Below are positions 1,505 to 44,727 of a stretch of DNA of 64,000 nucleotides, piece after piece; the stretch's first letter is position 1, and each line of letters opens with the position of its first letter. Both the position numbers and the translations under genes were made by a program. The stretch covers positions 186,001 through 250,000 of the IMG/VR virus record IMGVR_UViG_3300020442_000005; one strand, given 5' to 3'. Below the pieces are notes generated by a model. It searched no databases. It was not told the DNA's origin and worked only from the letters and a program-made list of their open reading frames with translations.

Positions 1505-2194
1505 TTGATGAAAACAGTATCTGATGTACGCAATATGTTTGCGCAAAAATACCTCAACAATGAATTTGTTGTCGACAAGTCTGGTTGCAAAATGCTTGAA
1601 GTGCTTGGTGTATCTTTCATTGCTGATGATGAAACCATATTTGGAAAAGTAAACTATGCGTACATTAAGAAAGAACTAGACTGGTATTTAAGTCAATCTC
1701 TCAATGTTTATAACATACCTGATACCCCTACAATCTGGAAGCAAGTTGCGACAGCTGAAGGCCAGATTAATTCCAACTACGGATATCTTATATTTTCTGA
1801 CGTCAATGGCCATCAATACGATTATGCCTTGAAGGCTTTGCTAGCTGATGAAAACACACGTCGTGCTTGCATGATTTACACTCGGCCTTCTATTCAAACT
1901 GAATACAACACGGCTGACATGTCAGATTTTATTTGCACCAATGCGGTAACTTACTTCATAAGAGATAATCGATTGAGCTGTGTTGTGCAGATGCGTTCGA
2001 ATGATATATGGGCTGGATACCGAAACGACTATGCGTGGCAGAAATGGGTATTAGAAAAGCTACATTCAGATCTTTTGAATAAATACGATAATTTAGAAAT
2101 CGGCGATATAATCTGGAACGCTTCTTCTCTACACATGTATGAAAGAAACTTTGGGTTAATAAGAAAATTTAATAAAATCGGTCTTTACAAATAG
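1505..2194 (+). CDS. dCMP hydroxymethylase (T4 gp42-like, thymidylate synthase fold)
   Basis: Collinear with T4 gp42 as recalled: FVVDKSG, KELDWY, INSNYG, MIYTRPS, MSDFICTN (catalytic Cys), MRSNDxxxGYRNDYAWQK (Asp where ThyA has Asn), WNASSLHMY. Confidence 0.85.
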   Translation: MMKTVSDVRNMFAQKYLNNEFVVDKSGCKMLEVLGVSFIADDETIFGKVNYAYIKKELDWYLSQSLNVYNIPDTPTIWKQVATAEGQINSNYGYLIFSDVNGHQYDYALKALLADENTRRACMIYTRPSIQTEYNTADMSDFICTNAVTYFIRDNRLSCVVQMRSNDIWAGYRNDYAWQKWVLEKLHSDLLNKYDNLEIGDIIWNASSLHMYERNFGLIRKFNKIGLYK

Positions 2195-2203
2195 GAGAAA
2201 ACT

Positions 2204-2614
2204 ATGTCAAACATATTAAAGGAAGCAGATCAAATCATCAACGAAAGATCTGAAGAAAAAGAACGTCAATACGGCCCTTTCAGCGAAGGTATGAAAAGAG
2301 CGGCTATGATTGCATCAGGTATGACCGGCAGAACTTGGTCAGCCCACGATATGTATATTGCTATGATTGCACTTAAGTTTTCTCGACAATCTTATAACTT
2401 TAAAGAAGATAATCTTCTTGATGCCGTGGCATACATCGGCGCGTGGCAAAATTTTATCGATGAAGAGAGACCAGCTCACGAAGGTCCGGATTCACACGAT
2501 GATATATCAATTTCAAACAACAAAACTCTTCTTACTGAAGATAACAACGAAGCGAGCCCAGATGATCCTAGGGCTCTGCTAAAAGCAATGATTGCAATGG
2601 AAGGAAAAAAATGA
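2204..2614 (+). CDS. DUF6378-like all-alpha protein, possible nucleotide pyrophosphohydrolase
   Basis: ILKEADQII..R...YGPF, ALKFSR and DNLLDAVAY pattern; lies in a nucleotide-metabolism block. Confidence 0.5.
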   Translation: MSNILKEADQIINERSEEKERQYGPFSEGMKRAAMIASGMTGRTWSAHDMYIAMIALKFSRQSYNFKEDNLLDAVAYIGAWQNFIDEERPAHEGPDSHDDISISNNKTLLTEDNNEASPDDPRALLKAMIAMEGKK

Positions 2615-3054
2615 GAATAGCAAAAACAAGAAAAGTAAAAACTCCAACCCGCGGTACCAAAGGCTCGGCTGGTATTGATTTCTATGTTCCAGATAATTAT
2701 CCTGCAGATATAGGACCGATCGACCCAGGGCATGCAGTGTTTGTTCCTTCCGGAATTAGTGCAAAAGTCCCAGATGGCTATGCGCTGATTGCATTTAATA
2801 AATCTGGTGTAGCTCTAAAAAAAGGCCTTACTGTTGGAGCTTGTGTTGTTGATTCCGATTATCAAGGAGAAATCCATCTTCATCTCGTTAATACGTCTAC
2901 CAAACCCGTACACATTGAACCCGGCGAAAAGCTAGTACAGTTCTTGCTTGTACCGGTCGACCATTGTGATATTGAGGTAGTTGACAGAGATACACTTTTC
3001 CAATCTGAGTCTCAGAGAGGCGCCGGCGGATTTGGAAGTACGGGAGTCAAGTAA
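2611..3054 (+). CDS. dut: trimeric dUTPase
   Basis: SAGIDF, NKSG, VVDSDYQGEI, RGAGGFGSTG. Confidence 0.93.
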   Translation: MRIAKTRKVKTPTRGTKGSAGIDFYVPDNYPADIGPIDPGHAVFVPSGISAKVPDGYALIAFNKSGVALKKGLTVGACVVDSDYQGEIHLHLVNTSTKPVHIEPGEKLVQFLLVPVDHCDIEVVDRDTLFQSESQRGAGGFGSTGVK

Positions 3055-4122: not shown

Positions 4123-5004
4123 ATGTTAGAACCATCTTCTATTAATACTGTTATTTATCACGCCAACTGCAACGACGGATTTGGCGCTTGTTATTCTGCT
4201 TGGAAGCTATTGGGTAATCGATGCGAATATATTGCATGCGCGCACGGAGATCCAGCACCTGACGTCACCGGTCGAAGAGTAGCAATTCTTGATTTTTCAT
4301 TTAATAATGCAACGACAAAGGCGATGATAGAGCAGGCGGAATCGTTGATCGTGATCGATCATCACAAGTCGGCTGTTGTTGAGTTGCACGATATATCAAA
4401 TACTATTTTTGATATGAATAAATCCGGGGCAATGCTTGCTTGGGAGTTCTTTCATCCTGGAAAAGAGCCTCCTAAGTTTGTACAATATATCGAAGATCGG
4501 GATTTATGGAAATGGGAACTTCCTTATTCAAAGGAATTCTCAGCAGCGTTTGATATGGTGCCATGGGACTTTCATGAGTATGAAAAGTTTGAAGATGATT
4601 CGGTTTTTGACGATGCTGTAAAGCGTGGATCATATATTTTGGCGTATTCAAAAACCGTCATTAAGAAGATTTGTGATAAAGCGGTTTCCAGAAAGTTTGA
4701 TGATTACGATGTCATGGTTGTAAACTCTTCCCACTGGATGTCTGAGATCGGATCGTCTTTGGCAAAAGACTGTGACTTCGCCATGATATGGTATTATGAC
4801 CATGATGAAAAGAACTACAAGTGTTCATTGCGCGCATTTCACGATACCATCGATGTGAGCGAAATCGCTAAAAAGTTTGGTGGCGGCGGTCATAGAAAGG
4901 CGGCTGGTTTTGTTCTTGCAAAGTCTAAACACCCAGATTCCATATTCATTCAACATGTAGAAGAAGAATCTATTTTGCCCGACGGAGAGTTCGGTGCAGA
5001 CTAG
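4123..5004 (+). CDS. DHH/DHHA1 family phosphoesterase
   Basis: YHxxCxDG, ILDFS, IDHH, DRDLW, GGGGHRKAAGF. Confidence 0.88.
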   Translation: MLEPSSINTVIYHANCNDGFGACYSAWKLLGNRCEYIACAHGDPAPDVTGRRVAILDFSFNNATTKAMIEQAESLIVIDHHKSAVVELHDISNTIFDMNKSGAMLAWEFFHPGKEPPKFVQYIEDRDLWKWELPYSKEFSAAFDMVPWDFHEYEKFEDDSVFDDAVKRGSYILAYSKTVIKKICDKAVSRKFDDYDVMVVNSSHWMSEIGSSLAKDCDFAMIWYYDHDEKNYKCSLRAFHDTIDVSEIAKKFGGGGHRKAAGFVLAKSKHPDSIFIQHVEEESILPDGEFGAD

Positions 5005-5407
5005 ACCTAGCTGGAATAGAATTTGGATGGACTTTGCTGAAACTATATCTCAGCGTAGTTATGATCCTAATTTTAAGGTTGGTTGTTGTATTGTCACAGA
5101 TGATAACTGTCAGGTGCTAGCAATTGGCTACAACGGCAATCATAAGGGCGGACCTAATAAAAGAGAATCAGACACACCAGGGCATTCAGGGTTTATACAC
5201 GCTGAAATTAATGCGTTAATTAAGTTGGACTATAATAATCCAAAATCAAAGAAAATGTATTTGACACTGAGTCCATGTTCGGCTTGTGCAAAGGCCATCA
5301 TCAATGGCGGTATTAATAAAGTTTTTTATAAAGAACAATATCGCTGTACTGCTGGAATCGAGTTACTTCGAGAATGCGGAATTGTTGTCGAGCAGATTAC
5401 AGATTAA
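4994..5407 (+). CDS. dCMP deaminase
   Basis: KVGCCI, GYNG, HAEINAL, PCSACAK zinc motifs. Confidence 0.88.
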   Translation: MQTRPSWNRIWMDFAETISQRSYDPNFKVGCCIVTDDNCQVLAIGYNGNHKGGPNKRESDTPGHSGFIHAEINALIKLDYNNPKSKKMYLTLSPCSACAKAIINGGINKVFYKEQYRCTAGIELLRECGIVVEQITD

Positions 5408-27202: not shown

Positions 27203-28141
27203 ATGTCCGGTTCAATTAATCTTGGTTACGCATGTATCAACATGTATTTGTCAGAAACAGAAAAAAATACACCAGCTCGAACGTGTCGCAAAGCAACGTT
27301 TCTGGAAAAAGGTTTGCCTCATGTCGGTATGTTGTTCGAACAAAACATTTGCAATCTCATTGCGATTCTCAAGTGGAATTACCGCAATGGTTTCACTTTG
27401 TACCGTATGTCATCAGATATGGCTCCATGGTGTTCAGAATACAACCTAGAAGACCTTCCAAACTGGGAAACATGTAAAGACTTACTCGCCAAAGCCGGCG
27501 CGTACGCTCGCGAAACTGGACAACGTTTGTCATTCCATCCCGGGGCATTTACCGTTCTAGCAGGTAAAAATCCAGCAACACTAAAGAAATCACTCCATGA
27601 GCTTGAAATCCATGGCAAAATTATGGATACGATGGGATTACCACGTTCCCGATATGCAAAAATCAACATTCATCTTGGTGGTGCATATGGCGACAAAGAC
27701 GCAGCAATTGCTCGGTTTATTGAGAACTACAAAAAGCTATCACCAGCGGTTACTACACGTCTGACGCTAGAAAACGATGATCGACCCAATCTGTATACAA
27801 CGCGTGATCTTGTTGAAAAAGTTTTTCCACACACAGGCATCCCAGTCGTGTTTGACTATCATCATCACTTATGCCATCCTGGTGACGACACAGCCGAGCA
27901 GGCTCTTGATCTTGCAGTTTCTACGTGGGGCGACGTGAAACCAGTTACCCATTATTCTGAGACTGCGCAAAAGGACAAGCCCAAAGCTGTCTTCCGTGCG
28001 CACAGCATCATGGTCGAAGGCTATATCAATACGTACGGCCATGACATCGATTGTGTAATCGAAGCTAAAGGTAAAGAGCGCGCTGTGCAAGGTTATCTAG
28101 CTCTATACGGCAAGGAAAACACGTGTCCTGAGGTTGCGTAA
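27203..28141 (+). CDS. uvsE: UV damage endonuclease (UvdE/UvsE)
   Basis: LGYACIN, YRMSSD, RLSFHPG, INIHLGG, LENDD, VFDYHHH, HYSE, IEAKGKE. Confidence 0.92.
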   Translation: MSGSINLGYACINMYLSETEKNTPARTCRKATFLEKGLPHVGMLFEQNICNLIAILKWNYRNGFTLYRMSSDMAPWCSEYNLEDLPNWETCKDLLAKAGAYARETGQRLSFHPGAFTVLAGKNPATLKKSLHELEIHGKIMDTMGLPRSRYAKINIHLGGAYGDKDAAIARFIENYKKLSPAVTTRLTLENDDRPNLYTTRDLVEKVFPHTGIPVVFDYHHHLCHPGDDTAEQALDLAVSTWGDVKPVTHYSETAQKDKPKAVFRAHSIMVEGYINTYGHDIDCVIEAKGKERAVQGYLALYGKENTCPEVA

Positions 28142-32379: not shown

Positions 32380-32517
32380 ATGTATTATGTTAGGAGCGTC
32401 GTTAGATTTATAAGTCAACGGCTATGTAAACCAAAAACAATAAACAAAGAATTAGATCCGGAGTACTGTGATGCCTGTGAATGCACGCCCTGTGATTGCG
32501 GATTTGGGAGTTATTAA
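32380..32517 (+). CDS. 45-aa Cys-rich peptide (not in ORF track)
   Basis: GGAG RBS; ends YCDACECTPCDCGFGSY; TAATG-coupled to metK. Confidence 0.6.
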   Translation: MYYVRSVVRFISQRLCKPKTINKELDPEYCDACECTPCDCGFGSY

Positions 32518-33500
32518 TGTCATTTAAAAATTATAGAACAGCAGAATGCGTCACACCAAAACATCCGGACAAAATTTGTGATACGATTTCTGACGCAATC
32601 TTAGACCATTGTCTTAAGTCAGATCCATATTCTCGAGTTGCCATTGAGACTGCTGGCGGCCATGGCCATATTCACATCACTGGTGAGATTACAACAAATG
32701 CCTTTTTGCCGCTTGAAGAAATTGCAACAGAGGTTTATGGAAAGCCAATCAAAGTTACGACCAATGTTGTACAACAAAGCAATGAGATCGCGCAAGGTGT
32801 TGACACAGGTGGAGCCGGAGATCAAGGGATTATGGTAGGCTATGCATGCGATCACAATCCAGAAATGATTCCAAACGAGTTGTTTCTTTCAAGACAGATC
32901 TGCAAAGAAATATTTAAAGCCTTTCCGTTTGATGGTAAAACACAGGTCACTCTAGAAAACAACAAAATCAAGACAGTTGTTGCCAGTTTTCAAAACGCTC
33001 CGAAAACAGAACTGACAAGAATCATCAATGGTTGGCTAAGGTCTTGTAGTTTTCCAGTCGATGATAACGTTACCCTTCACTGTAACCCAGCTGGAGATTG
33101 GAAAGTCGGTGGCTTTGATGCGGATGCCGGACTTACCGGTAGAAAGATCGTGATTGATAACTATGGCCCAGCTATCCCAGTCGGTGGAGGAGCATTCTCT
33201 GGTAAAGATCCAACAAAAGTAGATCGGTCCGCCGCATATATGGCTAGAAAAATTGCTGTAGATCACTTGCAACTTCTTCCAAAAAGAAAAGATGGAAACG
33301 AAATCTACGTTTATCTTGCTTATGCTATTGGCTATGACCAACCTGTACAAGCAACGATGATCGTTAACGGAAAAGAGAAATTAGTAACTGGATACGATTT
33401 AAGTCCGAACGGAATTATTGAGCATCTGGATCTAAGAAAACCAAAGTACTTTGAAACTGCACGTTGGGGCCATATGGGCACTGACCAAACATGGGGATAA
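32517..33500 (+). CDS. metK: S-adenosylmethionine synthetase (compact form)
   Basis: ECVTPKHPDKICDTISD, GAGDQG, DGKTQVT, DAGLTGRK, GGGAFSGKDPTKVDRS. Confidence 0.95.
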   Translation: MSFKNYRTAECVTPKHPDKICDTISDAILDHCLKSDPYSRVAIETAGGHGHIHITGEITTNAFLPLEEIATEVYGKPIKVTTNVVQQSNEIAQGVDTGGAGDQGIMVGYACDHNPEMIPNELFLSRQICKEIFKAFPFDGKTQVTLENNKIKTVVASFQNAPKTELTRIINGWLRSCSFPVDDNVTLHCNPAGDWKVGGFDADAGLTGRKIVIDNYGPAIPVGGGAFSGKDPTKVDRSAAYMARKIAVDHLQLLPKRKDGNEIYVYLAYAIGYDQPVQATMIVNGKEKLVTGYDLSPNGIIEHLDLRKPKYFETARWGHMGTDQTWG

Positions 33501-33501
33501 A

Positions 33502-33945
33502 ATGAGTTCTGAATCAACACCAAAACCAAAAAGAAAAAGAAACTGGGCAAAGAACAGAGATATTCTGAAAGCTATACCAAACCCTTCCGGGGATGCGTAT
33601 GAGATTAAAATGAAAATACCTGAGCTTACATTTGAAGGTGTTCGATCTCAGCCGGATTTTGCTAATCTGTATATCACTTTTTACCCGGGCAAAAAAGTTA
33701 TTGAGCTTAAGTCATTGAAAGAATATTTCTTTGCTTTTAGATCACAAATATATTCATATGAAAGAATCATCAATGTTATCTACGATGATATGATGGCTGT
33801 GTATGAACCAACAAGATTGCGACTGGTCATGACTTGTAATCCTCGTGGTGGGATCTCGTCTAAATTAACTGTAGATTCAGACTGGGGAGTTCGTGGTGGC
33901 AATGACCAGTTTATGGATTGGGTAGGGCAAAAAGAAGAATGGTAA
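33502..33945 (+). CDS. QueF-like T-fold protein lacking the catalytic Cys
   Basis: IPNP, PELT, QPDFA, ELKSLK, YE, PRGGIS; TFEGV replaces TSLCP. Confidence 0.8.
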
Positions 33946-36900
33946 GTTTTGATAAAAATCAGATCTATATTATTGATGGTGCAATGGGCACCGAAATACA
34001 GAAAAGACAGGTTGAATCCAAATTCTTTAAATACGAAGGAATCGACTGCGATGGCTTTAATGATATTTTGGTGCTCACCAAACCCGGCCTGATAAAAGAT
34101 ATACACGGTGATTACATCAACTCCGGCGCAAATATCATTGAGACAAATACCTTTAACGCTAATTATATTTCAGCGTTAGATTACGGACTTAGTGATGGAG
34201 CGATCGATAAAATAAACTTTAGCGCTGCCAAAATTGCAAAACAGGCTGCAAAAAAATCTAAAGAAGAGGTGTATGTAGCCGGTGTTTTAGGCCCGACTTC
34301 AAAAACTTTAAGCATGTCACCAAACGTTACAGATCCTTCTTATAGAGATATCACGTACCATGAATTACTCAATGCTTATAAAGCCGCAACTGAAAATCTA
34401 ATTCGTGGTGGCGCAGATTTGATTTTAATCGAAACAGTCTTTGACACACTTAATGCCAAGGCTGCGATTGAGGCTGTGAGACTGGTAGGAGAAGATATTC
34501 CTATCATGATATCAGGTACAATCGTTGACATGTCTGGTCGGACTTTATCTGGCCAGACTGTCGAGGCTTTTTGGAATTCCATTAAACACGCAAGGCCTAT
34601 TAGTGTTGGTTTGAATTGTGCGCTAGGTGCAAAGCAAATGGATCCATTTCTGCGGCGTCTAGCAGACGTCAGTGGTTGCGCAATCAGCGCACATCCGAAC
34701 GCGGGGTTACCAAACGAATTAGGTGAATACGACCAATCCCCGTCTGATATGGCAAACTATATTAAGAACTGGGCAAAAGCCGGGATTGTAAATATAATAG
34801 GTGGATGTTGTGGGTCGACTCCGGATCACATCAAAAAGATAGCCAACACCGTAAAAAAGTTTAAACCCAAAAGGCACATAACCAGAAGTTTTAATTTGGA
34901 CCGGTCAATGATTCTTTCTGGTTTAGAGGTCTTTGATAGCAAAGGAAAGAACTTTATTAATATTGGCGAGCGAACAAACGTCACTGGGTCTTCAAGGTTT
35001 AAAAAATGTATCGTAGAAAAAAGATATGATGATGCGTTGAATATTGCTCGTTCGCAGATTCTAAATGGCGCCCAGATTATCGATATCAATATGGACGATG
35101 GACTCTTAGATTCTAAGAGTGAAATGATTAATTTTTTAAAAATGTTGGCATGCGAGCCTGATATTGCAAAAGTACCAATCATGCTTGATTCTTCGAAGTG
35201 GGATATCCTATCGGAAGCCATGAGATGGATACAAGGGAAAGGTATTGTAAATTCAATTTCTCTTAAAGATGGAGAATCAGACTTTCTTGCCCGGGCAAAA
35301 GAAATTGTTTCGTGCGGACACGCTTTTGTGGTAATGGCTTTTGATGAAAAAGGGCAGGCTGATACTTTTGATAGAAAAATAGAGATATGTGAACGCGCTT
35401 ATTGGATTTTAGTTAACGCAGGAATAAAGCCACAAGACATTATTTTTGATCCAAATATCTTTGCAATCGCCACCGGGATAGAAGAACACGACAACTATGC
35501 AGTCGACTTTATAACTGCTACTGCATGGATTAAAAAGAACCTGCCTGGATGCTACGTCTCCGGAGGATTATCAAACCTATCATTCTCTTTCAGGGGAAAT
35601 CCTCGCGTGAGAGAGATGATGCATTCCGTCTTTTTGTTTCATGCTATCAAAGCCGGGTTGGACATGGCGATTGTAAACGCAGGTCAACTAATGGTGTACG
35701 ACCAGATCGATCAAGGCCATCGGGACATTGTTGAATCTGTTATTTTAAATAAGCATGAAGAAGCATCGGCACAGCTTTTAGAATTAGCAAAATCTCTATC
35801 TGGTAAAACCCGAGTAGAATCTAACGGGTTCCAAGAATGGCGTAACGAAGAGGTTGAAGAAAGAATATCTTTTGCCCTTATAAACGGTATCGATAAATTT
35901 ATCGTCGAAGATGTCAAGGAATGTTACAACAAAATAGGCTCGGCATTAAACGTTGTTGAAGGACCGTTGATGGATGGTATGAACGTAGTTGGAGACCTTT
36001 TTGGCTCCGGTAAAATGTTTTTACCTCAAGTAGTCAAGTCAGCGCGTGTAATGAAAAAAGCAGTCTCGTGGCTCGAGCCTTTTATGGTTGGCACAGATGA
36101 AGCAATACAGAGGGAAAAAATACTGCTTGCCACAGTTAAAGGCGACGTTCATGACATTGGAAAAAACATTGTTAGTATAGTTCTTCAATGTAATGGATAC
36201 GAGATAGTTGATCTAGGAGTCATGGTTCCATTAGAAAAGATACTAGAGGAAGCTGATAAACACCAGGTTGCAGCAATCGGTCTTAGCGGATTGATTACAC
36301 CAAGTTTAGATGAGATGGTTAAAGTTGCTCGAGCAATGAATGAAAGACAAATGGATATACCTTTACTAATTGGTGGAGCAACAACATCAAAAGTTCACAC
36401 GGCAATCAAAATATCTCCGGAGTACTCAAAAACAGTATATATACAAAATGCATCGATTGCAGTCGGAATTGTTAATGACGTGTTAAGTAAGAGTGATGCA
36501 TTCGATAAGATTAATAGGGATTATGAAGAAACTAGGGAGAGAAGAAACTCGAGAAAGCAAACGTTTGTAAGTGTTTCTGATGCAAGAAGAAATGCATATC
36601 AGCTAAAAGGAAAGCCACAGATTCCAGATAACTTTGGAATGACTATCAAAAGCAAAGCTTCAGTTTCAGAGATCATACCATATATTGATTGGGCACCGTT
36701 TGCAATGACTTGGGGAATGAAACCAAAAGATCTTACAAGCCAAGTCGGTAAAGATCTAATGAAGGATGCCCGAGAAATGCTTCGAAAACTTGATGATAAG
36801 ATTGTAGTTAACTATTCATTTGCTATCGATAAATGTACAAAAACAAATAATGACGATGTACTGGTGAAAAGACCGGATAAATCAACGACTTTTAATTTCA

Positions 36901-37454
36901 TGAGGCAAGCAACAAAAAAATCTCGGCCGAATCTTTGTTTGACAGATTTCTTACATCAGGAAGATTGGATAGGGTCTTTTGCGGTCTGGGTGTGCGGAAT
37001 CGATAAGAGAGCAGACATGCTCAGATTAGCCAACGATGATTACGGATCGATCATGATGCAAGCGCTTGGGGATAGACTCGCCGAAGCAACGGCTGAATGG
37101 CTACACGAGAGGGTTCGTAAGTCATGGTGGGGTTACTCAAAAGACGAAAACTTGACAAATACCGACCTTATAAAAGAGCGTTACTTAGGAATCAGGCCAG
37201 CACCCGGATATCCAGCCTGTCCGGATCATACCCAGAAGATAAAAATATTAAACTGGTTAGAAATTAGTGATACAATAGAGCTGACCGAGGGTTTAACAAT
37301 GTCGCCAAAGTCCGCAATATGTGGTTGGTACTTTGCAAGTGCAGAATCAAAATACTTCGGTGTTGGAAAAATACCAGACGAATACGTAGAAGATTTAAAA
37401 GAAAGAAATCCATATCTAAAAAAATACAAAAATCATATAACGGGAGTTAGTTAA
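33939..37454 (+). CDS. metH: cobalamin-dependent methionine synthase, full four-module form
   Basis: [51 protein letters not shown]. Confidence 0.96.
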
Positions 37455-37455
37455 C

Positions 37456-38784
37456 ATGGATAAATTTACAGATTACAAAGTCGCAGATACAAATCTATGG
37501 CGTTGGGGAAAAGACGAGGTAGAATTAGCAGAACATGAAATGCCAGGCCTCATGGCACTGCGTGAAAAGTATGCAGCAGACAAACCACTTCAAGGAGCTA
37601 GAATTGCCGGGTGTTTGCATATGACAATCCAGACCGCTGTTTTAATCGACACTCTTGTCGAGCTTGGCGCAGATGTACGTTGGATGACGTGTAATATCTA
37701 TTCGACACAAGATCACGCCGCGGCATACATTGCAGAGCAGCAAATCCCAGTGTTTGCTTGGAAGGGAATGACCGAGGATGACTATGAGGAATGTTTAGAA
37801 AAAGTCTTATGGTTCGATGAAGGCGTAGGTCCAAACATGATTCTAGATGACGGTGGTGACCTCACAGGATATATCCTGAAGAACCATCCGGATCTTTATA
37901 AGGATATTAAGGGTATCTCCGAAGAGACAACTACTGGTGTTTTAAGATTGGTAGAGTATCAAAACGATGGGGTCCTGCCGGTACCTTGCTTTAACGTTAA
38001 CGATTCTGTTACTAAATCAAAGTTTGACAACAAGTACGGATGTCGTGAGTCGTGTGTTGATGCGATTCGAAGAGCGACAGACATCATGATGGCGGGAAAA
38101 GTTGCGACTGTGGCTGGCTATGGCGACGTAGGTAAAGGTTCTGCTGCTAGTCTGTCCGCGGCTGGCTGTCGTGTTATTGTCACTGAGATCGATCCAATCT
38201 GTGCATTGCAAGCCGTAATGGACGGATTCCAGGTTTTACCTATGGACGAAGCGGTTAAGCAATCCGACATTGTAGTTACAGCAACCGGTAATTGCGACGT
38301 GGTTAGATCAGAACATTTTTCCAATATGAAAGACAACGTTATCGTTTGTAACATTGGACATTTTGATAACGAGATCGATGTAGCATGGTTAAACGAGAAC
38401 TTCGAATCCAAAAACGTAAAACCACAGGTCGACGTATATTATCTTCCGTCCGGACTGACTGATAATAAACCAAATCCTCCGTACAAGAAGATCGTTCTGT
38501 TAGCACAGGGAAGACTAGTGAATCTAGGTTGCGCCACCGGGCATCCAAGCTTTGTTATGTCCTGTTCTTTTGCAAATCAGGTACTTGCACAGATCGAGTT
38601 ATTTTTGAACTCTGATAATTATGAAAATAAAGTTTATGTGCTCCCAAAGATTCTTGACGAAGAGGTTGCCAGATTGCATCTCGATCACGTTGGCGCCAAA
38701 CTCGATAAACTTTCAAACGTTCAGTCGAAATACATTGGCGTGAAACAAACCGGTCCATTTAAGTCTGACGAATATCGTTACTAG
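37456..38784 (+). CDS. ahcY: S-adenosylhomocysteine hydrolase
   Basis: [62 protein letters not shown] end. Confidence 0.96.
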
Positions 38785-38806
38785 ATTTAAAACACTGCGC
38801 CAATGG

Positions 38807-38833
38807 AAAGGAGGGTTAATCCCTCCTTTCTTA
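38807..38833 (+). terminator. intrinsic terminator after ahcY
   Basis: aaaggaggg-ttaat-ccctccttt then T-rich. Confidence 0.75.
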
Positions 38834-38836
38834 ATT

Positions 38837-38867
38837 TGTAAAAATGCAGATTAGCTATTATATTATA
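38837..38867 (+). promoter_or_regulatory. promoter TGTAAAA-N15-TATATTATA
   Basis: Recurrent motif. Confidence 0.6.
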
Positions 38868-38893: not shown

Positions 38894-40030
38894 ATGAAAA
38901 CAATAGAGGAATATGATTTTACTGAGCTGGATAATAAGTTCGAATCAAAACTGAGACCAGACACCAAGAGAAAAATCATTCGAACAATTAACATGGGCAA
39001 GTCTGTTGATTATATACCAGACTTTAATAAGCCTCCTCAAGCTCGAGCATACTATCTAGATAATTTCCTAGTGTATGTTGATCACGAGGATAGAAAAAAA
39101 ATACTGAATGTATATTGGAATAAAAAGCTAATTGACACTAAGCTGCGAGATATCGAAAATTTTGAGCTCAAAAAACCTTTAAGAATTTCCGGAAGAGATA
39201 GTAGCCACATCTTTTCTAGAACCATTGCGCGAGTAATTTCCAAGAAAGAAATATTAAATTGCCTGGCTAACGGCGCACAAGTAAAGAACTTTAGTAAAAC
39301 TCAGAAACCAGACGGATCATTTTATGTTTTCTATGACAGATACTACTTTGCTGACGATGTGTGCGTCGTAGCTTCTGAGACTAAGAACTATATAAATGTA
39401 CGTACTGTTTATCGAACAACTCCAATCGCAGATCAACATTTTCTCGATTTGCTTCCCAAGCTCATTAATGAACTGAAAATAAATGAAAGTAGCAACGTAA
39501 GGGCTTCTATCGTAAACAACTCTGCCCGAATGAAATATCTGCAGACAAAGGAATACATGGACTTGCAATTATTCTTGAGAACTATCAGTGGCAACAATCC
39601 ATTTGTACAAGAAGAATCACTTGAGAAAGTAATCGATCAAAAATCTGTTTTGATGCCTAAGATTCTCCAATCCGCGGCAGCTGCCCGATTAAGATGCAAA
39701 GATATCGAATATTATGTTGCAACAACTGAAAACAGCGAAAGTCGATCAAATATAAATGATTTTGTTCTGGAGTCCAACAAATCCTACAGTCTCCAGCTGT
39801 CATTTGATAACGTGAATGATAAAACCATCGACAAGAATAGAGCGGTTACACTTAGAGAGTACGGTATTGACATTGATAAATATGAACACAGTTTAAATAT
39901 TGAAAACAACAAAGCGATTCTTACGATTGATTTTAGTCATTTTTCTGCTGCAGAAAATCCTTGGGCCATCAGAAAGAACAAGAAAAACCTTTCATTTGGA
40001 TCTTTTGATTTAGAGGAGAGCGAGGTATGA
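38894..40030 (+). CDS. hypothetical protein
   Basis: 378-aa ORF with GGGAG RBS. Confidence 0.7.
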   Translation: MKTIEEYDFTELDNKFESKLRPDTKRKIIRTINMGKSVDYIPDFNKPPQARAYYLDNFLVYVDHEDRKKILNVYWNKKLIDTKLRDIENFELKKPLRISGRDSSHIFSRTIARVISKKEILNCLANGAQVKNFSKTQKPDGSFYVFYDRYYFADDVCVVASETKNYINVRTVYRTTPIADQHFLDLLPKLINELKINESSNVRASIVNNSARMKYLQTKEYMDLQLFLRTISGNNPFVQEESLEKVIDQKSVLMPKILQSAAAARLRCKDIEYYVATTENSESRSNINDFVLESNKSYSLQLSFDNVNDKTIDKNRAVTLREYGIDIDKYEHSLNIENNKAILTIDFSHFSAAENPWAIRKNKKNLSFGSFDLEESEV

Positions 40031-40488
40031 AAAGATTGTGGAACCCACCGTTGCTCAATGAATGGGCTGAGCCTTTAATACAAGAGAGATATTTCCCGGA
40101 TAGATGGAAGATGCTGGTATGTTGTCTAATGTTAAATCTGACGTCACATAAACAGGTCAATCCAATCATCGATGGCTTTTTCGAAAGATGGCCCACCGCT
40201 TTGAAAGCTTCTCAGGCTGATGAGTTAGAGATGAAAGAGTATCTAAAATCCTTGGGAATGTATAACAAGCGTGCAAAAACAATTATAAAAATGTCAAAAC
40301 AGTTTCTAGAAGGCTTTTCTCAGCCAAAACAATTATATGGATGCGGTAAATACGCGTCAGACTCTGATCTTATATTCTATCAGGGAAGATGGAAAGAGGT
40401 TGAACCAACCGATGGCGCGCTCAAGAGATATATACGATTTATGAAAAACTATGAAAAAAACCGTGTACAATCGATCAAAACGGCTTAA
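40027..40488 (+). CDS. MBD4-like HhH mismatch DNA glycosylase
   Basis: W.PP, LIQE...D.WKMLVCCLMLNLT, LGMYNKRAKTI, LYGCGKYASDS, W..VEPTD (catalytic Asp). Confidence 0.82.
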   Translation: MKRLWNPPLLNEWAEPLIQERYFPDRWKMLVCCLMLNLTSHKQVNPIIDGFFERWPTALKASQADELEMKEYLKSLGMYNKRAKTIIKMSKQFLEGFSQPKQLYGCGKYASDSDLIFYQGRWKEVEPTDGALKRYIRFMKNYEKNRVQSIKTA

Positions 40489-40512: not shown

Positions 40513-41097
40513 ATGAACGAAATACAACAAGCTTTCGACAATACTGATTCTTCCTACATGGAGGCATCACTCAAACAAAGAAATCCGGGTCCTGGATCTG
40601 CGGGAAGTACGTTTTTTGAGACGACCACGTTTGAAGATCTAAAGTTCGCAGACTGGCAACCAGCAAACGATGATGCCATTACTGCTCCAGCTGAAGGATT
40701 TACAACAAACCAGTTCGGTGGATTACTTGGGATTACAAGGTTAGAAAACCTTCCGCAAGACATGACCGTTGTTTTGCAACCAGCTCACGGTGGCAAAGCA
40801 AAGATTAGAGGTGGTGAATATGACGGTCAAAATCCTGCCGAATGTGCAGCGATTCTCACAGACAGTCAAAGAATGGCGGTTGATTTTACTACACTAATCA
40901 TTGGACCTGACAAAGTAGATCCTACCAAGAAAGTTGTTTGGACTTTTTTCCCGGGACCGGCGACATTCAAGTTTAAGGACATTCCTTTTTCAATGTTGCA
41001 GCAGAGATTTGGAACAGAAGATAACCAAATTAGAATTACAGTTGCGGAAGCAATTGCGGTTGGTTACAACTTCTGCAAACACGTACCAACTCTATAA
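40513..41097 (+). CDS. hypothetical protein
   Basis: Own promoter; 194-aa ORF. Confidence 0.7.
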   Translation: MNEIQQAFDNTDSSYMEASLKQRNPGPGSAGSTFFETTTFEDLKFADWQPANDDAITAPAEGFTTNQFGGLLGITRLENLPQDMTVVLQPAHGGKAKIRGGEYDGQNPAECAAILTDSQRMAVDFTTLIIGPDKVDPTKKVVWTFFPGPATFKFKDIPFSMLQQRFGTEDNQIRITVAEAIAVGYNFCKHVPTL

Positions 41098-41147
41098 GGT
41101 ACCGGTGTCAAAACACCAAACAGTTCTTTTAAATCGCAGTAAACTTT

Positions 41148-41231
41148 GCTCGGGTGGCGGAATCGGTAGACGCACCAGACTTAAAATCTGTTGTCCGTAT
41201 GGGCGTGAGGGTTCAAGTCCCTCTTCGAGCA
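41148..41231 (+). tRNA. tRNA-Leu (UAA)
   Basis: Cloverleaf; anticodon loop cttaaaa; long variable arm; T arm gaggg-ttcaagt-ccctc; CCA not encoded. Confidence 0.93.
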
Positions 41232-41391
41232 TTACAATAGGGAATACCTGAGGGGAAGGTATTTTAAATGAGATTGACCTGAAGCTAGATATTACGCTGG
41301 GATCCACAACGAACTTTTATATGATCGACCGCTATAATCTAGAACATCCGCCCTTTCATTTCTTTAAACAATAATTAATTAGGTTATACAA

Positions 41392-41781
41392 ATGGAATTA
41401 ACAAATGGCCAGATTGAGATAGGTATAGTGTTTTTCTATGGCTTTGTAGCAGGATTAGTTGTCAGTATTCTGTATGCTCATGAGCGTTGGAAAAACTTCA
41501 ACTACGACGAGGAACGACGGTTACAATATCAAAAAGAAACGGATGAAAGAAGAAGGATACGCCTTGAGAAATATAAAGAGATGAGAAATCCTGAATCTCA
41601 GTTACGAGTGATACATAAGCAGGAAGAATATATAAGAGAATTACTCTTAGAGCAAGCTAGACTGCACAAACAACTCAATGCATTCGCTGGATGGCCTGAA
41701 TATGAACACTTCCACGAAGATCTTATGAAAAAAATCGACAAACGATTTGAATCTTTACGAATTGAACATGATAACATTTGA
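41392..41781 (+). CDS. N-terminally anchored membrane protein
   Basis: TM segment IGIVFFYGFVAGLVVSILYA followed by coiled coil. Confidence 0.6.
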   Translation: MELTNGQIEIGIVFFYGFVAGLVVSILYAHERWKNFNYDEERRLQYQKETDERRRIRLEKYKEMRNPESQLRVIHKQEEYIRELLLEQARLHKQLNAFAGWPEYEHFHEDLMKKIDKRFESLRIEHDNI

Positions 41782-41828
41782 ACAACTACAGGACTATCTG
41801 TATAATAACTAGGTAAACAAAACTTCAT

Positions 41829-41902
41829 GCATCCATAGCTCAGCTGGATAGAGCATCCGCCTTCTAAGCGGACGGTCGCAGGTTCGAATCCTGCTGGATG
41901 TA
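41829..41902 (+). tRNA. tRNA-Arg (UCU)
   Basis: Cloverleaf; tccgc-cttctaa-gcgga. Confidence 0.95.
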
Positions 41903-41906
41903 CTTT

Positions 41907-41978
41907 TGGTCTGTAGTGTAATAGGTAACACACCAGTTTTTGGCACTGGCGTTCTAGGTTCAAGTCCTGGCAGACCAG
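41907..41978 (+). tRNA. tRNA-Gln (UUG)
   Basis: tggtctg/cagacca acceptor; ccagt-ttttggc-actgg. Confidence 0.92.
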
Positions 41979-42017
41979 CTTTTATACAACTTTAAACAAT
42001 AGGGTATTATTATTTAT

Positions 42018-42120
42018 GGGTCTAGTTAACCTCGAGGGTTCGAACCCCTCTATGACCAAGCAGGCAGGGAGCAATGACTAGATGTCGCCAACAGAAAGAT
42101 ATTCACCAGTATCTCCTTTT
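42018..42120 (+). ncRNA. candidate structured RNA containing an isolated T arm
   Basis: gaggg-ttcgaac-ccctc inside an outer stem tctagtta/tgactaga; promoter-like sequence upstream and terminator-like hairpin plus T run downstream. Confidence 0.45.
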
Positions 42121-42189
42121 GGTTGATAAGCCTTGGGATAGGAAAGTGGTGAGTCCTATCCCAAAGTTCCATCCTTAACTTCATCACAC

Positions 42190-42262
<73 letters not shown>

Positions 42263-42265
42263 TAG

Positions 42266-42338
42266 GCGGGAATAGCTCAGTTGGTAGAGCACCACGTTGC
42301 CAACGTGGAAGTCGCGAGTTCAAGTCTCGTTTCCCGCT
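42266..42338 (+). tRNA. tRNA-Gly (GCC)
   Basis: Cloverleaf; ccacg-ttgccaa-cgtgg. Confidence 0.95.
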
Positions 42339-42343
42339 CTTTT

Positions 42344-42416
42344 GGACACTTAGCTCAGCGGTCAGAGCATCCGACTCATAATCGGCAGGTCCAGGGTTCA
42401 ATCCCCTGAGTGTCCA
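42344..42416 (+). tRNA. tRNA with CAU anticodon (Met or lysidine-modified Ile2)
   Basis: Cloverleaf; loop ctcataa; G1-C72 paired, so not an initiator. Confidence 0.9.
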
Positions 42417-42421
42417 CTTTC

Positions 42422-42562: not shown

Positions 42563-43420
42563 ATGATCGGACATACACCATTCATCTGTATTGACAATGA
42601 TGAAAGAATATGGGCAAAACTAGAAACACACAATAAAACCGGATCTGTAAAAGATCGAATGATTGATTACATATGCGATAATGCTCTTGCAAATGGTGCA
42701 ATCATTCCTGGAAAGACCCGGCTCATTGAGGCAACCAGTGGAAATACTGGAATTGCTTTAGCCAGTTATGCAGCCTCAGTGGGATGCAAATGCCAAATCA
42801 TAATGCCATGTAACATGTCGGAAGAAAGAAAACAAATGATGCATGCGTTCGGCGCCGAAATTATAGAAACCGGCCCAAACGAATTTGGACGTGCAATTGC
42901 GATGAGAGACTTGAAACTGCGGAAGTCTAACCCCGGAGAATATTTCTCGCCTCTTCAATTTAGTAATCCTTTAAATGTGGAATGTCACAGAACAACCACA
43001 GCGCCAGAGATTCACCAGAACATAACAGACATTAAGTGTCTCGCTTGGGATGCATTCGTGCATGGCTCTGGAACTGGAGGGACTATGATGGGATTGAAGA
43101 GTTACATTGATGAGAATAGGTTAGGAGTGAAATGCGTCTTAACTCAGCCGGAAGAAGATAACGCATCCCATGGAATACAGGGCATTAACGATGGTGCTGA
43201 TTTTCTATTAGATAAGTCATTGATGGATGAGTTTATATACGTGAAGACGTCCTCAGCAATTGAACGAATGAAGAGATTCTGGAAAGAAAATGGTATCCTG
43301 ATCGGCATCAGTTCCGGGGCAAACATTCTGGCTGCAGAAGAATACGTGAGAAAGCATGATCCAGCTGGAATCGTCGTCACTATTTTATGTGATCGTGGAG
43401 AAAGATATTTAAAATGTTGA
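42563..43420 (+). CDS. cysK: cysteine synthase (PLP-dependent, CysK/CysM family)
   Basis: KLE..NKTGSVKDR, EATSGNTG, GSGTGGT, HGIQGI, GISSGAN, DRGERYL. Confidence 0.88.
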   Translation: MIGHTPFICIDNDERIWAKLETHNKTGSVKDRMIDYICDNALANGAIIPGKTRLIEATSGNTGIALASYAASVGCKCQIIMPCNMSEERKQMMHAFGAEIIETGPNEFGRAIAMRDLKLRKSNPGEYFSPLQFSNPLNVECHRTTTAPEIHQNITDIKCLAWDAFVHGSGTGGTMMGLKSYIDENRLGVKCVLTQPEEDNASHGIQGINDGADFLLDKSLMDEFIYVKTSSAIERMKRFWKENGILIGISSGANILAAEEYVRKHDPAGIVVTILCDRGERYLKC

Positions 43421-43427
43421 GGATAAT

Positions 43428-43736
43428 ATGAAAGGATATAAAACAAGAGAAGAAATAGAAACCATGGTACCGAATCTTCTAGTTCCCTGGTTTATGATGG
43501 GAAGCTATGCTTACTATTCTTTGGGCATGCCATTAATGGAAGACCCAACCTTTGATTATCTTGTACAAAGGCTCAAAGAATGTTATGATGAAGTAGAACA
43601 TATTCATAAAAAACACATCACAAAGGAACATCTAGATGCTGGAACTGGATACGATATAGATTATCCGGAGATGGCTAAGGGTGCTACTATACATTATTTA
43701 AAGGAGAGCGGATTATGGAACTTATATTTGGAATGA
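43428..43736 (+). CDS. stand-alone domain resembling the N-terminal (Ia) subdomain of NAD-dependent ligase
   Basis: SYAYY....PLMEDPTFDYLVQRL. Confidence 0.45.
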   Translation: MKGYKTREEIETMVPNLLVPWFMMGSYAYYSLGMPLMEDPTFDYLVQRLKECYDEVEHIHKKHITKEHLDAGTGYDIDYPEMAKGATIHYLKESGLWNLYLE

Positions 43737-44218: not shown

Positions 44219-44476
44219 TTGGCGAATAATATTCCATGGAAAAAACATGATCTTTATTTTGAGTTCGACGGTGATCAAGTGCATGCTGAAATTATTTGGT
44301 GGGCAAAAGACTATTACATTCTTATCAAGAAGCCGTACGAAATGCATTTGAAGGGCCTGCATATGATGTATATGATTCCTGCAAAGTTCGTTATTGAGAT
44401 CGATCCAAAAGACAAGCTGCATCAGGTTCCAATTCTTGACACATGCAAATCAATGATTATGGACGCGCTGTCATGA
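44219..44476 (+). CDS. hypothetical protein
   Basis: In operon. Confidence 0.55.
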   Translation: MANNIPWKKHDLYFEFDGDQVHAEIIWWAKDYYILIKKPYEMHLKGLHMMYMIPAKFVIEIDPKDKLHQVPILDTCKSMIMDALS

Positions 44477-44727
44477 AGGACTATTTTGTATACATTGTGG
44501 AATGCGCCGACGGCACTTACTATACCGGCATAACGACTGATGTTGACAGACGAATACTAGAGCATAACTACTCTTTTAAGTCTGCAAAGTATACTAGATC
44601 CAGACGTCCAGTTAAACTTGTGTACTCAAAGTTGGTTGGCAACAGATCAGAAGCTTCTAAGGAAGAATGCAGGATAAAAAAACTTAGCAGATCAGCTAAG
44701 AGCGCAATAATTAGAGATGATCAGTAA
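44473..44727 (+). CDS. GIY-YIG nuclease (UPF0213 type)
   Basis: FVYIVECADGTYYTGIT.DVDRR..EHN...KYTRSRRPV.LVY...A..EE..IKKL. Confidence 0.88.
   Translation: MKDYFVYIVECADGTYYTGITTDVDRRILEHNYSFKSAKYTRSRRPVKLVYSKLVGNRSEASKEECRIKKLSRSAKSAIIRDDQ

What the first reader, a model, noticed from the sequence alone, without database searches (positions are those of the whole stretch)
40027..40488. Stand-alone MBD4-like glycosylase next to the methyl-cycle operon
Seen: the 153-aa ORF follows the catalytic domain of eukaryotic MBD4 closely, including the W.PP start, the HhH motif and the catalytic Asp in VEPTD. Established: MBD4 excises T, U and 5hmU opposite G, the deamination products of 5mC, C and 5hmC. 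Inference: dedicated repair for a genome carrying modified cytosine, which independently supports the gp42-like call.
Basis: partly seen in the sequence, partly recalled or inferred. Interest (0 to 1): 0.62.

Follow-up and report, generated by a model that had tools for sequence, protein, structure and literature searches.

The report
Phage MBD4-type mismatch glycosylase gene
A marine giant phage that builds its DNA with modified cytosine carries a small stand-alone copy of the MBD4 repair enzyme, and relatives of this gene turn up almost only in phages that also modify cytosine, which fits a role in repairing deaminated modified cytosines.

Summary
Window 40027-40488 (+) encodes a 153-aa protein whose best solved relatives are the human and mouse MBD4 glycosylase domains (E 4e-28, about 40% identity; model TM 0.85-0.94). 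The base-reading Gln and Tyr and the catalytic Asp are kept. MutY and Nth match only at E above 1e-3.

The genome is a 273-kb marine jumbo phage (IMG/VR). It also encodes a true T4 gp42 homologue (E 4e-70, Cys148 and Asp179 kept), a Nei-type glycosylase/lyase and UvdE.

- At least 537 IMG/VR contigs and 9 cultured phages carry this gene, including Xp12, the classic all-5mC phage.
- 11 of 12 near-complete viral records and all 9 cultured phages also carry a thymidylate-synthase homologue with the dCMP-specifying Asp.
- C5 DNA methyltransferases are not associated (1 of 50 records).
- The reverse does not hold. No T-even-type phage has the gene, and two complete relatives with the modifying enzyme lack it. 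The gene is therefore accessory.

In many relatives the gene overlaps the start of a Nei-type gene. Adjacency to the MetK-QueF-MetH-AhcY genes is confined to the nearest relatives, and a terminator-like hairpin lies between them.

No activity was measured. I found no published description.

The parts
40027..40488 (+). Stand-alone MBD4-type HhH-GPD DNA glycosylase, 153 aa (P0001). Key residues: Gln19 (= human Gln449), Leu38 (= Arg468 wedge position), Leu76 (= Leu506), Tyr109 (= Tyr540), Asp129 (= catalytic Asp560).
38894..40030 (+). Upstream ORF X, 378 aa, function unknown. Its TGA overlaps the glycosylase ATG (ATGA), so the two are probably translated as a pair. It is conserved with the glycosylase only in the nearest relatives.
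   Evidence: weak sub-threshold DUF4258 hit; no fold match
40513..41097 (+). Downstream ORF, 194 aa, function unknown. It keeps the same position in the 84%-identity relative L123.
38805..38831 (+). Terminator-like hairpin (11-bp stem, 6 G-C pairs) right after the AhcY stop. It separates the methyl-cycle genes from the X-glycosylase unit.
   Evidence: pattern match only
38836..38864 (+). Promoter-like site (9 of 12 matches) ahead of ORF X.
   Evidence: pattern match only; such matches are not enriched over shuffles
1505..2194 (+). gp42-type dCMP hydroxymethylase homologue, 229 aa. The catalytic Cys (FICTN) and the cytosine-specifying Asp (RNDYAW) are kept. This is the presumed source of the modified cytosine whose deamination product the glycosylase would remove.
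2611..3054 (+). dUTPase / dCTP-deaminase-superfamily protein next to the gp42 homologue. Part of the nucleotide-modification module.
4994..5407 (+). dCMP deaminase-family protein in the same module.
27203..28141 (+). UvdE-type TIM-barrel endonuclease. A candidate to incise the abasic sites that a monofunctional glycosylase leaves (inference).
   Evidence: a UvdE gene also lies two genes upstream of the glycosylase in relative L125
32496..38784 (+). MetK (32496-33500), QueF-like (33451-33945), MetH (33918-37454) and AhcY (37456-38784). This is the neighbouring methyl-cycle block. It is adjacent to the glycosylase, but the adjacency is not conserved outside the nearest clade.

Best explanation
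The ORF encodes a monofunctional, mismatch-specific pyrimidine DNA glycosylase of the MBD4 type. It would flip out a uracil-type base (T, U or a 5-substituted U such as 5-hydroxymethyluracil) paired with G and cut the glycosidic bond with Asp129, leaving an abasic site. This phage makes 5-hydroxymethyl-dCMP with a gp42 homologue, so its cytosines are presumably replaced by hmC or a derivative. Deamination of such a base gives hmU:G (T:G in 5mC phages such as Xp12), a lesion that uracil-DNA glycosylase does not handle. The phage enzyme would remove the deaminated base. The abasic site would then be cut by the phage's Nei-type glycosylase/lyase or by UvdE. The gap would be refilled from the infected cell's modified dCTP pool, restoring the modified C:G pair. 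Shown here: fold, family, conserved catalytic and base-reading residues, and gene co-occurrence and linkage. Inferred: substrate range, the actual DNA modification, and the downstream repair steps.
For: Family and active site:
- E 4e-28 to solved MBD4 domains against 2e-3 for MutY.
- Model TM 0.85-0.94 and rmsd 1.2-1.4 A to MBD4 bound to G:T and G:5hmU DNA.
- Gln19, Tyr109 and Asp129 align to Gln449 (essential, reads N3/O2), Tyr540 (reads O2) and catalytic Asp560. Asp129 and Tyr109 are invariant, and Gln19 nearly so, in 18 diverse homologues.
- Tyr sits where bifunctional HhH enzymes have the Lys nucleophile, and there is no Fe-S Cys cluster. This points to a monofunctional enzyme (sequence; for the principle).

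Partner chemistry:
- The gp42 homologue scores E 3.9e-70 with Cys148 and Asp179 kept.

Co-occurrence:
- All 9 cultured phages with a strong relative carry an Asp-type TS homologue. In the 8 Xp12-like phages it lies about 0.8 kb away. Xp12 DNA is 5mC (abstract of PMC7653180).
- 11 of 12 IMG/VR records at least 70% complete carry an Asp-type TS homologue, spread over 10 sequence subtypes and at least 7 phage lineages.
- Background: any TS-family match occurs in about 6% of 50,697 phage records, and gp42-type in 1.8%.

Repair context:
- In 16 of 24 loci holding both genes, the glycosylase stop overlaps or abuts the start of a Fpg/Nei-family gene, inside a RecA-FEN-DnaB-RNR-PolIII-alpha module.
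- The window's own genome has that Nei gene at G000:C1:179018-179830, with the catalytic N-terminal Pro-Glu, and UvdE at 27203-28141.

Not a general bacterial gene:
- 400 sampled bacterial genomes gave only partial Nth/MutY-like matches.
Against: - No biochemical or DNA-chemistry data exist for this phage, which is an uncultured metagenome contig.
- The Arg468 'wedge' of MBD4 is Leu here (Leu, Gln or Met in relatives), and Lys562 and Gly471 are not kept. Substrate range could therefore differ.
- The gene is dispensable for modified-cytosine phages. None of 929 phage records with a gp42-type gene and only 13 of 74 records with an Xp12-type TS carry it. Two 96-100% complete relatives with an Asp-type TS lack it.
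- One 70%-complete record with the gene showed no TS homologue (G035). One clade of fragmentary records has an Asp-type TS in only 1 of 16 members.
- Many co-occurrences are within lineages and so are not independent.
- If the hmC is glycosylated, the deaminated product may be too bulky for the pocket.
Confidence: 0.62

Rival explanations
1. It is a general-purpose G:U / G:T mismatch glycosylase with no special link to base modification. The co-occurrence with Asp-type TS homologues would only reflect shared ancestry of a few large phage lineages that happen to have both.
For: MBD4 also excises U opposite G. In the PolIII-alpha jumbo-phage lineage the Asp-type TS is a core gene present in nearly every locus, so within that lineage co-occurrence carries no information. 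The gene is accessory.
Against: The association recurs in unrelated phage types (Xp12-like siphoviruses, cyanophage S-TIM54, several jumbo lineages) with 10 different TS subtypes. In Xp12-like phages the gene sits inside the nucleotide-modification module. No strong relative was found in the roughly 47,000 cultured-phage records without a TS-family gene.
Confidence: 0.12
2. Same chemistry, different source of damage. The enzyme would counter enzymatic deamination rather than spontaneous deamination. The deaminase could be a host anti-phage or toxin DNA deaminase, or the phage's own dCMP-deaminase-family enzyme acting off-target on modified cytosine in DNA.
For: dCMP-deaminase-family genes sit in the same modules (window 4994-5407; Xp12). 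A 2024 preprint reports that some phage deoxycytidine deaminases associated with cytosine modification prefer 5mC and are usable on DNA (abstract of 10.1101/2024.12.05.627091).
Against: No deaminase gene is specifically linked to the glycosylase in the neighbourhood clustering. There is no evidence on the host, and the idea is not needed to explain the data.
Confidence: 0.12
3. The enzyme has a shifted specificity. For example, it might remove unmodified or wrongly modified pyrimidines as quality control of the modification, or attack foreign (host or competitor) DNA.
For: The wedge residue and two pocket-lining positions differ from MBD4 (Arg468 to Leu, Gly471 to His, Lys562 to Ala). Phages with modified C are known to target C-containing DNA (established for T4 endonucleases).
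Against: The residues that read the uracil-type Watson-Crick face (Gln, Tyr, and the main chain after Leu17-Ile18) are kept. The opposite G is read by main-chain carbonyls in MBD4. The tight pairing with a Nei-type repair gene and the placement in a replication/repair module point to repair.
Confidence: 0.07
4. It is a non-catalytic DNA-binding remnant of a glycosylase.
For: None specific.
Against: The catalytic Asp and the base-reading residues are invariant or nearly so across homologues down to 33% identity.
Confidence: 0.02

Closest known systems
Glycosylase domain of mammalian MBD4 (PDB 4e9e, 4dk9, 1ngn, 4ew0 and others)
   Same: About 40% identity over the whole 140-residue domain. Same fold (TM 0.85-0.94). 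Same WxPP start, HhH hairpin and catalytic Asp. The Gln and Tyr that read the uracil-type base are kept. Tyr replaces the Lys nucleophile, and there is no Fe-S cluster.
   Different: Stand-alone 153-aa protein with no methyl-CpG-binding domain and no linker. The Arg468 wedge is Leu; Gly471 is His; His561 and Lys562 are Gly and Ala. It is encoded by a phage, often overlapping a Nei-type gene. Its presumed context is a genome with every cytosine modified, not CpG methylation.
Plant MBD4-like (MBD4L) glycosylases
   Same: MBD4-type catalytic domain without a methyl-CpG-binding domain (my own knowledge; a plant BER review, PMC6728418, uses the term).
   Different: The plant proteins are much longer and nuclear. 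No sequence comparison was run here.
Hypothetical protein QNN97216.1 of Xanthomonas phage Xp12 and its homologues in Xp12-like phages
   Same: Same family (35% identity, E about 1e-16, 85% coverage). Phage-borne and stand-alone. The genome has an Asp-type TS homologue.
   Different: In Xp12 the gene lies inside the nucleotide-modification module (HAD hydrolase, TS-like enzyme, dCMP deaminase, DHFR). It is annotated only as hypothetical, ENDO3c or endonuclease III. Here it lies 38.5 kb from the gp42 homologue.
Mig/thermostable thymine-DNA glycosylase (PDB 1kea), MutY and endonuclease III
   Same: Same HhH-GPD superfamily. Mig also removes T from G:T.
   Different: Only E 0.15 (1kea), 2e-3 (MutY) and 0.07 (EndoIII), with TM about 0.55-0.65. 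Those enzymes carry a 4Fe-4S cluster, and EndoIII has a Lys nucleophile. Both are absent here.

Membership tests
MBD4-type HhH-GPD glycosylase domain | HhH-GPD fold above the Pfam threshold, with MBD4 as the closest solved relative by sequence and by structure | tested here: met
   PF00730 41.8 bits against a cut-off of 26.2; MBD4 E 4e-28 against MutY 2e-3; TM 0.85-0.94 to 16 MBD4 structures
MBD4-type HhH-GPD glycosylase domain | Catalytic Asp (human Asp560) | tested here: met
   Asp129 aligns to it and is invariant in 18 homologues
MBD4-type HhH-GPD glycosylase domain | Base-reading Gln449 and Tyr540 | tested here: met
   Gln19 (nearly invariant) and Tyr109 (invariant); their roles are taken from PMC3479182
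MBD4-type HhH-GPD glycosylase domain | Monofunctional: no Lys nucleophile in the HhH hairpin and no 4Fe-4S cluster | tested here: met
   GCGKY has Tyr109 at the position of the EndoIII Lys. There are only three Cys (32, 33, 106) and no cluster motif (principle in PMC8307549)
MBD4-type HhH-GPD glycosylase domain | Arg468 wedge that fills the gap left by the flipped base | tested here: not met
   Leu38 here; Leu, Gln or Met in homologues.
MBD4-type HhH-GPD glycosylase domain | Excision of T, U and 5hmU opposite G | not testable with these tools
   Needs an enzyme assay
Full-length MBD4 (animal architecture) | N-terminal methyl-CpG-binding domain joined to the glycosylase domain | tested here: not met
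   The protein is 153 aa and Pfam finds only HhH-GPD. All 87 word-search homologues are 84-166 aa
Endonuclease III / MutY | Fe-S cluster loop; Lys nucleophile (Nth) or C-terminal 8-oxoG-reading domain (MutY); family-level score | tested here: not met
   TIGR01083 nth 42 bits against a cut-off of 211.7; PDB E 0.07 and 2e-3; the protein ends at residue 153
T4 gp42-type dCMP hydroxymethylase (partner gene, window 1505-2194) | TS fold with the catalytic Cys148 and the cytosine-specifying Asp179 in place of the TS Asn | tested here: met
   E 3.9e-70 to PDB 1b49. FICTN and RNDYAW are aligned to FMCTN and RNDYAW. Cys144 and Asp175 are invariant in 13 Asp-type homologues, while canonical ThyA copies show PFNIAS
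Phage base-excision pair: MBD4-like plus Nei-like | Glycosylase gene directly followed by a Fpg/Nei-family gene on the same strand | tested here: not met
   True in 16 of 24 relatives' loci. In this genome the Nei-type gene is 47 kb away at G000:C1:179018-179830

The most novel reading that the evidence does not exclude
Stand-alone MBD4-type glycosylases, often fused in an operon with a Nei-type lyase, form a widespread phage-borne repair module found almost only in genomes whose cytosines are replaced through TS-like dCMP-modifying enzymes. If so, the gene is a usable marker for cytosine-modified phage DNA in metagenomes. It would also mean the MBD4 catalytic domain of eukaryotes shares a close origin with this phage family, as has been proposed for TET/JBP.
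Probability: 0.3. Interest if true: 0.7.

Novelty: new member of a known kind. Interest (0 to 1): 0.55.

Why it matters
Phages that replace cytosine with 5mC, hmC or larger derivatives create a repair blind spot. The deaminated bases (T or hmU opposite G) are not removed by uracil-DNA glycosylase. These data suggest that many such phages bring their own MBD4-type enzyme, and often a Nei-type partner, to close that gap.

This gives three things:
- A testable function for a gene annotated as 'hypothetical' in Xp12 and in hundreds of metagenomic phages.
- A candidate genomic marker for cytosine-modified phage DNA.
- Small, robust G:T / G:hmU glycosylases that could be useful reagents for methylation analysis.

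The enzyme shares 40% identity with human MBD4, and its full-length form was not found in 400 sampled bacterial genomes. This raises the question of how the eukaryotic enzyme and the phage family are related.

Tried and rejected
- PHROGs gave no family for the glycosylase. NCBIfam gave only a far sub-threshold nth match.
- A C5 DNA methyltransferase link was tested and rejected: PF00145 matched 1 of 50 records and did not match the window's genome.
- A functional link to the methyl-cycle genes was rejected. A terminator-like hairpin lies between them. Synteny is kept only in the 84%-identity relative, not in L108, L125 or L004.
- ORF X (378 aa) and the 194-aa ORF gave no lead. This covers Pfam, PHROGs and NCBIfam, the Atlas, and an AlphaFold2 model of X (pLDDT 73) with no Foldseek PDB match.
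The narrower one found a single hit, in a contig filed as a Methylococcaceae MAG. That scan used strict patterns, so it says little about distant bacterial relatives.
- The Pfam TS model missed two divergent Asp-type TS homologues that a home-made profile found.
- A lineage-matched 2x2 test anchored on PolIII-alpha was uninformative for dependence, because nearly every member has the Asp-type TS.
- Literature searches found no description of a phage MBD4-like glycosylase. The MetaGPA supplementary table is stored truncated and did not show HhH-GPD. One review was not held.
- Not run: read laying (only assembled contigs of DNA runs were available and no RNA holder); complex prediction (I make no binding claim); the large representative search (the word search and family scans had already settled the family, and that library has no names or context).
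Full report
**1. The observation**

Window 40027-40488 (+) is an ATG-to-TAA ORF of 153 aa (P0001). Its ATG overlaps the TGA of the upstream 378-aa ORF (ATGA), and a GAGG motif lies just upstream.

- Pfam assigns HhH-GPD above threshold (E 1.5e-10).
- Against every PDB chain, the 15 best distinct sequences are all the MBD4 glycosylase domain (E 4e-28 to 2e-26, residues 5-144 aligned). MutY follows at 2e-3 and endonuclease III at 0.07.
- An AlphaFold2 model (pLDDT 88.6) matches 16 MBD4 structures, including complexes with G:T and G:5hmU DNA. Values are TM 0.85/0.91-0.94, rmsd 1.2-1.4 A and about 40% identity. The next fold, MutY, is at TM about 0.6.

**2. Active-site reading**

The human structure paper (PMC3479182) says the following:
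- Gln449 is essential and reads N3/O2 of the flipped base.
- Tyr540 reads O2.
- The Val448 amide reads O4.
- Asp560 is the catalytic residue.
- Arg468 fills the gap in the duplex.
- The main-chain carbonyls of Arg468 and Leu506 read the opposite guanine.
- The 5-hydroxymethyl group of 5hmU touches no protein atom.

By the alignment, the equivalents here are:
- Leu17-Ile18-Gln19
- Tyr109
- Asp129
- Leu38 in place of Arg468
- Leu76

In 18 homologues down to 33% identity, Tyr109, Asp129, Leu76, Gly77 and Arg82 are invariant and Gln19 is nearly so. The wedge position is Leu, Gln or Met, never Arg. Tyr109 sits where bifunctional HhH enzymes carry their Lys nucleophile (principle in PMC8307549). The protein has only three cysteines and no cluster motif.

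The prediction is a monofunctional glycosylase for uracil-type bases opposite G. It should tolerate 5-substituents and uses a different wedge from MBD4.

**3. The genome**

The window is bases 186001-250000 of a 273-kb IMG/VR virus record, estimated 82% complete. Nearly all genes are on one strand, there are six tRNA genes, and the sequence is found in marine metagenomes only.

The TS-like ORF at 1505-2194 is a genuine homologue of T4 dCMP hydroxymethylase (E 3.9e-70). The catalytic Cys148 (FICTN) and the cytosine-specifying Asp179 (RNDYAW) are kept. Ordinary thymidylate synthases match only at 1e-8. Next to it lie a DUF6378 protein, a dUTPase-superfamily protein, an NAD-dependent sugar epimerase, a DHH phosphoesterase and a dCMP deaminase. 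The gp42-like call therefore stands on its own evidence.

**4. Distribution of the glycosylase**

- The word search found 87 homologues, all 84-166 aa, from marine metagenomes. [quoted passage not shown]
- In 400 bacterial genomes sampled from one phylum, only partial matches in Nth- or MutY-sized frames appeared (E 1e-9 to 1e-11). The single full-length match is a 305,838-base contig filed under a Methylococcaceae MAG. That contig carries phage-like genes shared with this genome, so it looks like a mis-binned relative.
- Among 50,697 cultured or deposited phage records, strong matches occur in 14 records of 9 phages: Xp12, YB23, MET13-T1, FMYAK-P1, Ep029, DoCa6, AXL_1, Donnerlittchen and cyanophage S-TIM54.
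- Three weaker, partial matches (Aeropyrum virus, a faecal fragment) look like other HhH families.

**5. The co-occurrence test**

Xp12 is the classic phage whose cytosines are all 5mC (abstract of PMC7653180). There the gene (QNN97216.1, 'hypothetical protein') is followed by a HAD hydrolase, the TS-like enzyme, dCMP deaminase and DHFR. In the seven other Xp12-like carriers, the TS homologue (72-99% identical to Xp12's) lies about 0.8 kb from the glycosylase.

I used the specificity residue to type TS homologues: Asn177 in ThyA against Asp179 in gp42. This is established knowledge, and PDB mutant entries of exactly these residues appear.
- Canonical copies read PFNIAS.
- Every non-canonical copy has Asp at that column: window RNDYAW, Xp12 PYDV, S-TIM54 PLDMF, and seven further subtypes.

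Of the 12 glycosylase-bearing IMG/VR records that are at least 70% complete, 11 have an Asp-type TS. Two of these were missed by the Pfam model and recovered with a home-made profile. The one without (G035) is 70% complete.

Background in the phage collection is as follows:
- gp42-type: 929 records (1.8%)
- Xp12-type: 74 records
- any TS-family match by a ThyA query: 3,140 records (6.2%)

C5 DNA methyltransferases are not associated (1 of 50 records).

A quick tree of the glycosylases shows that every major clade has at least one well-assembled member with an Asp-type TS. TS subtypes switch between close relatives: the window has the gp42 type, while its 81%-identical relative has the CNDVF type. 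The link is therefore to cytosine C5 modification in general, not to one enzyme.

**6. The association is one-directional**

- None of the 929 gp42-type records and only 13 of the 74 Xp12-type records carry the glycosylase.
- In a sample of 80 loci anchored on the lineage's PolIII-alpha gene, the Asp-type TS sits just downstream in almost every locus with enough sequence. The glycosylase is within 10 kb in 27 of them.
- Of 20 records lacking it locally, 4 have it elsewhere.
- Two genomes that are 96% and 100% complete have the TS but no glycosylase.

The gene is an accessory that seems to be kept only where cytosine is modified.

**7. Repair context**

I clustered the ORFs of 80 viral loci. 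In the largest lineage the glycosylase sits in a replication and repair module with RecA, a 5'-3' exonuclease, DnaB, ribonucleotide reductase, ClpP, ThyX and PolIII-alpha. An Fpg/Nei-family gene follows directly. In 16 of the 24 loci holding both, stop and start overlap or lie within 31 nt, most often an 8-nt overlap.

The window's genome has the same module upstream of the window. This includes the Nei-type gene at G000:C1:179018-179830, which starts Met-Pro-Glu-Gly-Pro-Glu like Nei. But the glycosylase has moved 47 kb downstream. The window also holds UvdE (27203-28141), and in a 73%-identical relative UvdE lies two genes upstream of the glycosylase.

A monofunctional glycosylase needs an enzyme to cut the abasic site. 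Nei-type lyases and UvdE are the obvious candidates, though this step is inferred.

**8. The methyl-cycle neighbours**

MetK, a QueF-like gene, MetH and AhcY lie directly upstream. A strong terminator-like hairpin (38805-38831) and a promoter-like site follow the AhcY stop. ORF X and the glycosylase therefore probably form a separate unit.

The order MetK-QueF-MetH-AhcY-X-glycosylase-194aa is kept in the 84%-identical relative. It is not kept in relatives at 81%, 73% or 54% identity. I read the adjacency as incidental.

ORF X and the 194-aa ORF remain unexplained.

**9. Comparison with what is known, and novelty**

The protein is a member of the MBD4 catalytic-domain family by sequence, fold and active site. 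It is not a full-length MBD4, because it has no methyl-CpG-binding domain, and it lacks the Arg wedge.

Searches of the held literature found no description of phage MBD4-type glycosylases. This includes a broad jumbo-phage genomics review, which lists only endonuclease V and UvdE among sporadic repair genes. That is absence in a partial library, not proof.

I rate it a new member of a known kind. The enzyme type is known. What is new is that it is phage-borne and widespread, tracks cytosine-modifying phages, and is often paired with Nei.

**10. Verdict**

| Claim | Confidence |
|---|---|
| The gene is real and is an MBD4-type glycosylase | about 0.9 |
| It repairs deaminated modified cytosine in the phage's own DNA | about 0.6 |

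The repair role is the best-supported explanation. It rests on comparative genomics and conserved residues, not on any assay.

Noticed in passing
window 32496-38784: A phage-encoded methyl cycle: MetK (SAM synthetase), MetH (B12-dependent methionine synthase) and AhcY (SAH hydrolase), with a QueF-like gene wedged between MetK and MetH. The same block is in an 84%-identity relative. QueF hints at 7-deazaguanine chemistry. I did not search the genome for DpdA/TGT or QueC/D/E.
   Followed up: partly
G000:C1:179960-180577 (about 5.4 kb upstream of the window start): An ORF starting MKIKTILADPPWKL lies right after the Nei-type gene. The DPPW motif suggests an MT-A70-type N6-adenine DNA methyltransferase, a possible consumer of the phage-made SAM.
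   Followed up: no
G000:C1:177959-178957 (upstream of the window): Three tandem paralogous small ORFs (each starting MRISKR.../MKVTKR...) fill the slot just upstream of the Nei-type gene. Relatives carry the MBD4-like gene in that slot.
   Followed up: no
L108 / L110 (contig NHDW01000006.1, 305,838 bases): This contig is filed as 'MAG: Methylococcaceae bacterium TMED69'. It carries an 81%-identical glycosylase, an Asp-type TS and several other genes shared with this phage. It looks like a jumbo-phage genome binned into a bacterial MAG.
   Followed up: partly
window 1505-2194 versus L109: The TS-like dCMP-modifying enzyme has been swapped between close relatives. The window has the T4 gp42 type (RNDYAW), while the 81%-identity relative has the CNDVF type common in the lineage. 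Related phages may therefore carry different cytosine modifications.
   Followed up: partly
window 3055-4044: An NAD-dependent sugar epimerase/dehydratase lies two genes after the gp42 homologue. A homologue holds the same place after the TS-like gene in relative L007. This is a possible hint that the hmC is further glycosylated with an unusual sugar.
   Followed up: no
window 41147-42417: A cluster of six tRNA genes (Leu-TAA, Arg-TCT, Gln-TTG, Thr-TGT, Gly-GCC, Met-CAT). The tRNA-Leu is 88-93% identical to tRNA-Leu genes of marine cyanomyoviruses.
   Followed up: no
window 42563-43420, 43428-43736, 44443-44727, 8427-9110: Other auxiliary genes: a cysteine-synthase-like PLP enzyme, an ORF consisting only of the N-terminal Ia domain of NAD-dependent DNA ligase, a 94-aa stand-alone GIY-YIG protein, and a Fe/Mn superoxide dismutase.
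   Followed up: no
G455:C1:258667-259107 (record behind L160): The MBD4-like match in this 84%-complete relative has one in-frame TGA. It may be a broken copy, a sequencing error or recoding. I did not examine it.
   Followed up: no
L118 (G046:C1:150830-151603) and L119 (G038:C1:129336-129539): Two divergent Asp-type TS homologues are invisible to Pfam PF00303 at its threshold. A profile of Asp-type members finds them. Surveys of cytosine-modifying phages that rely on the Pfam model will undercount.
   Followed up: yes
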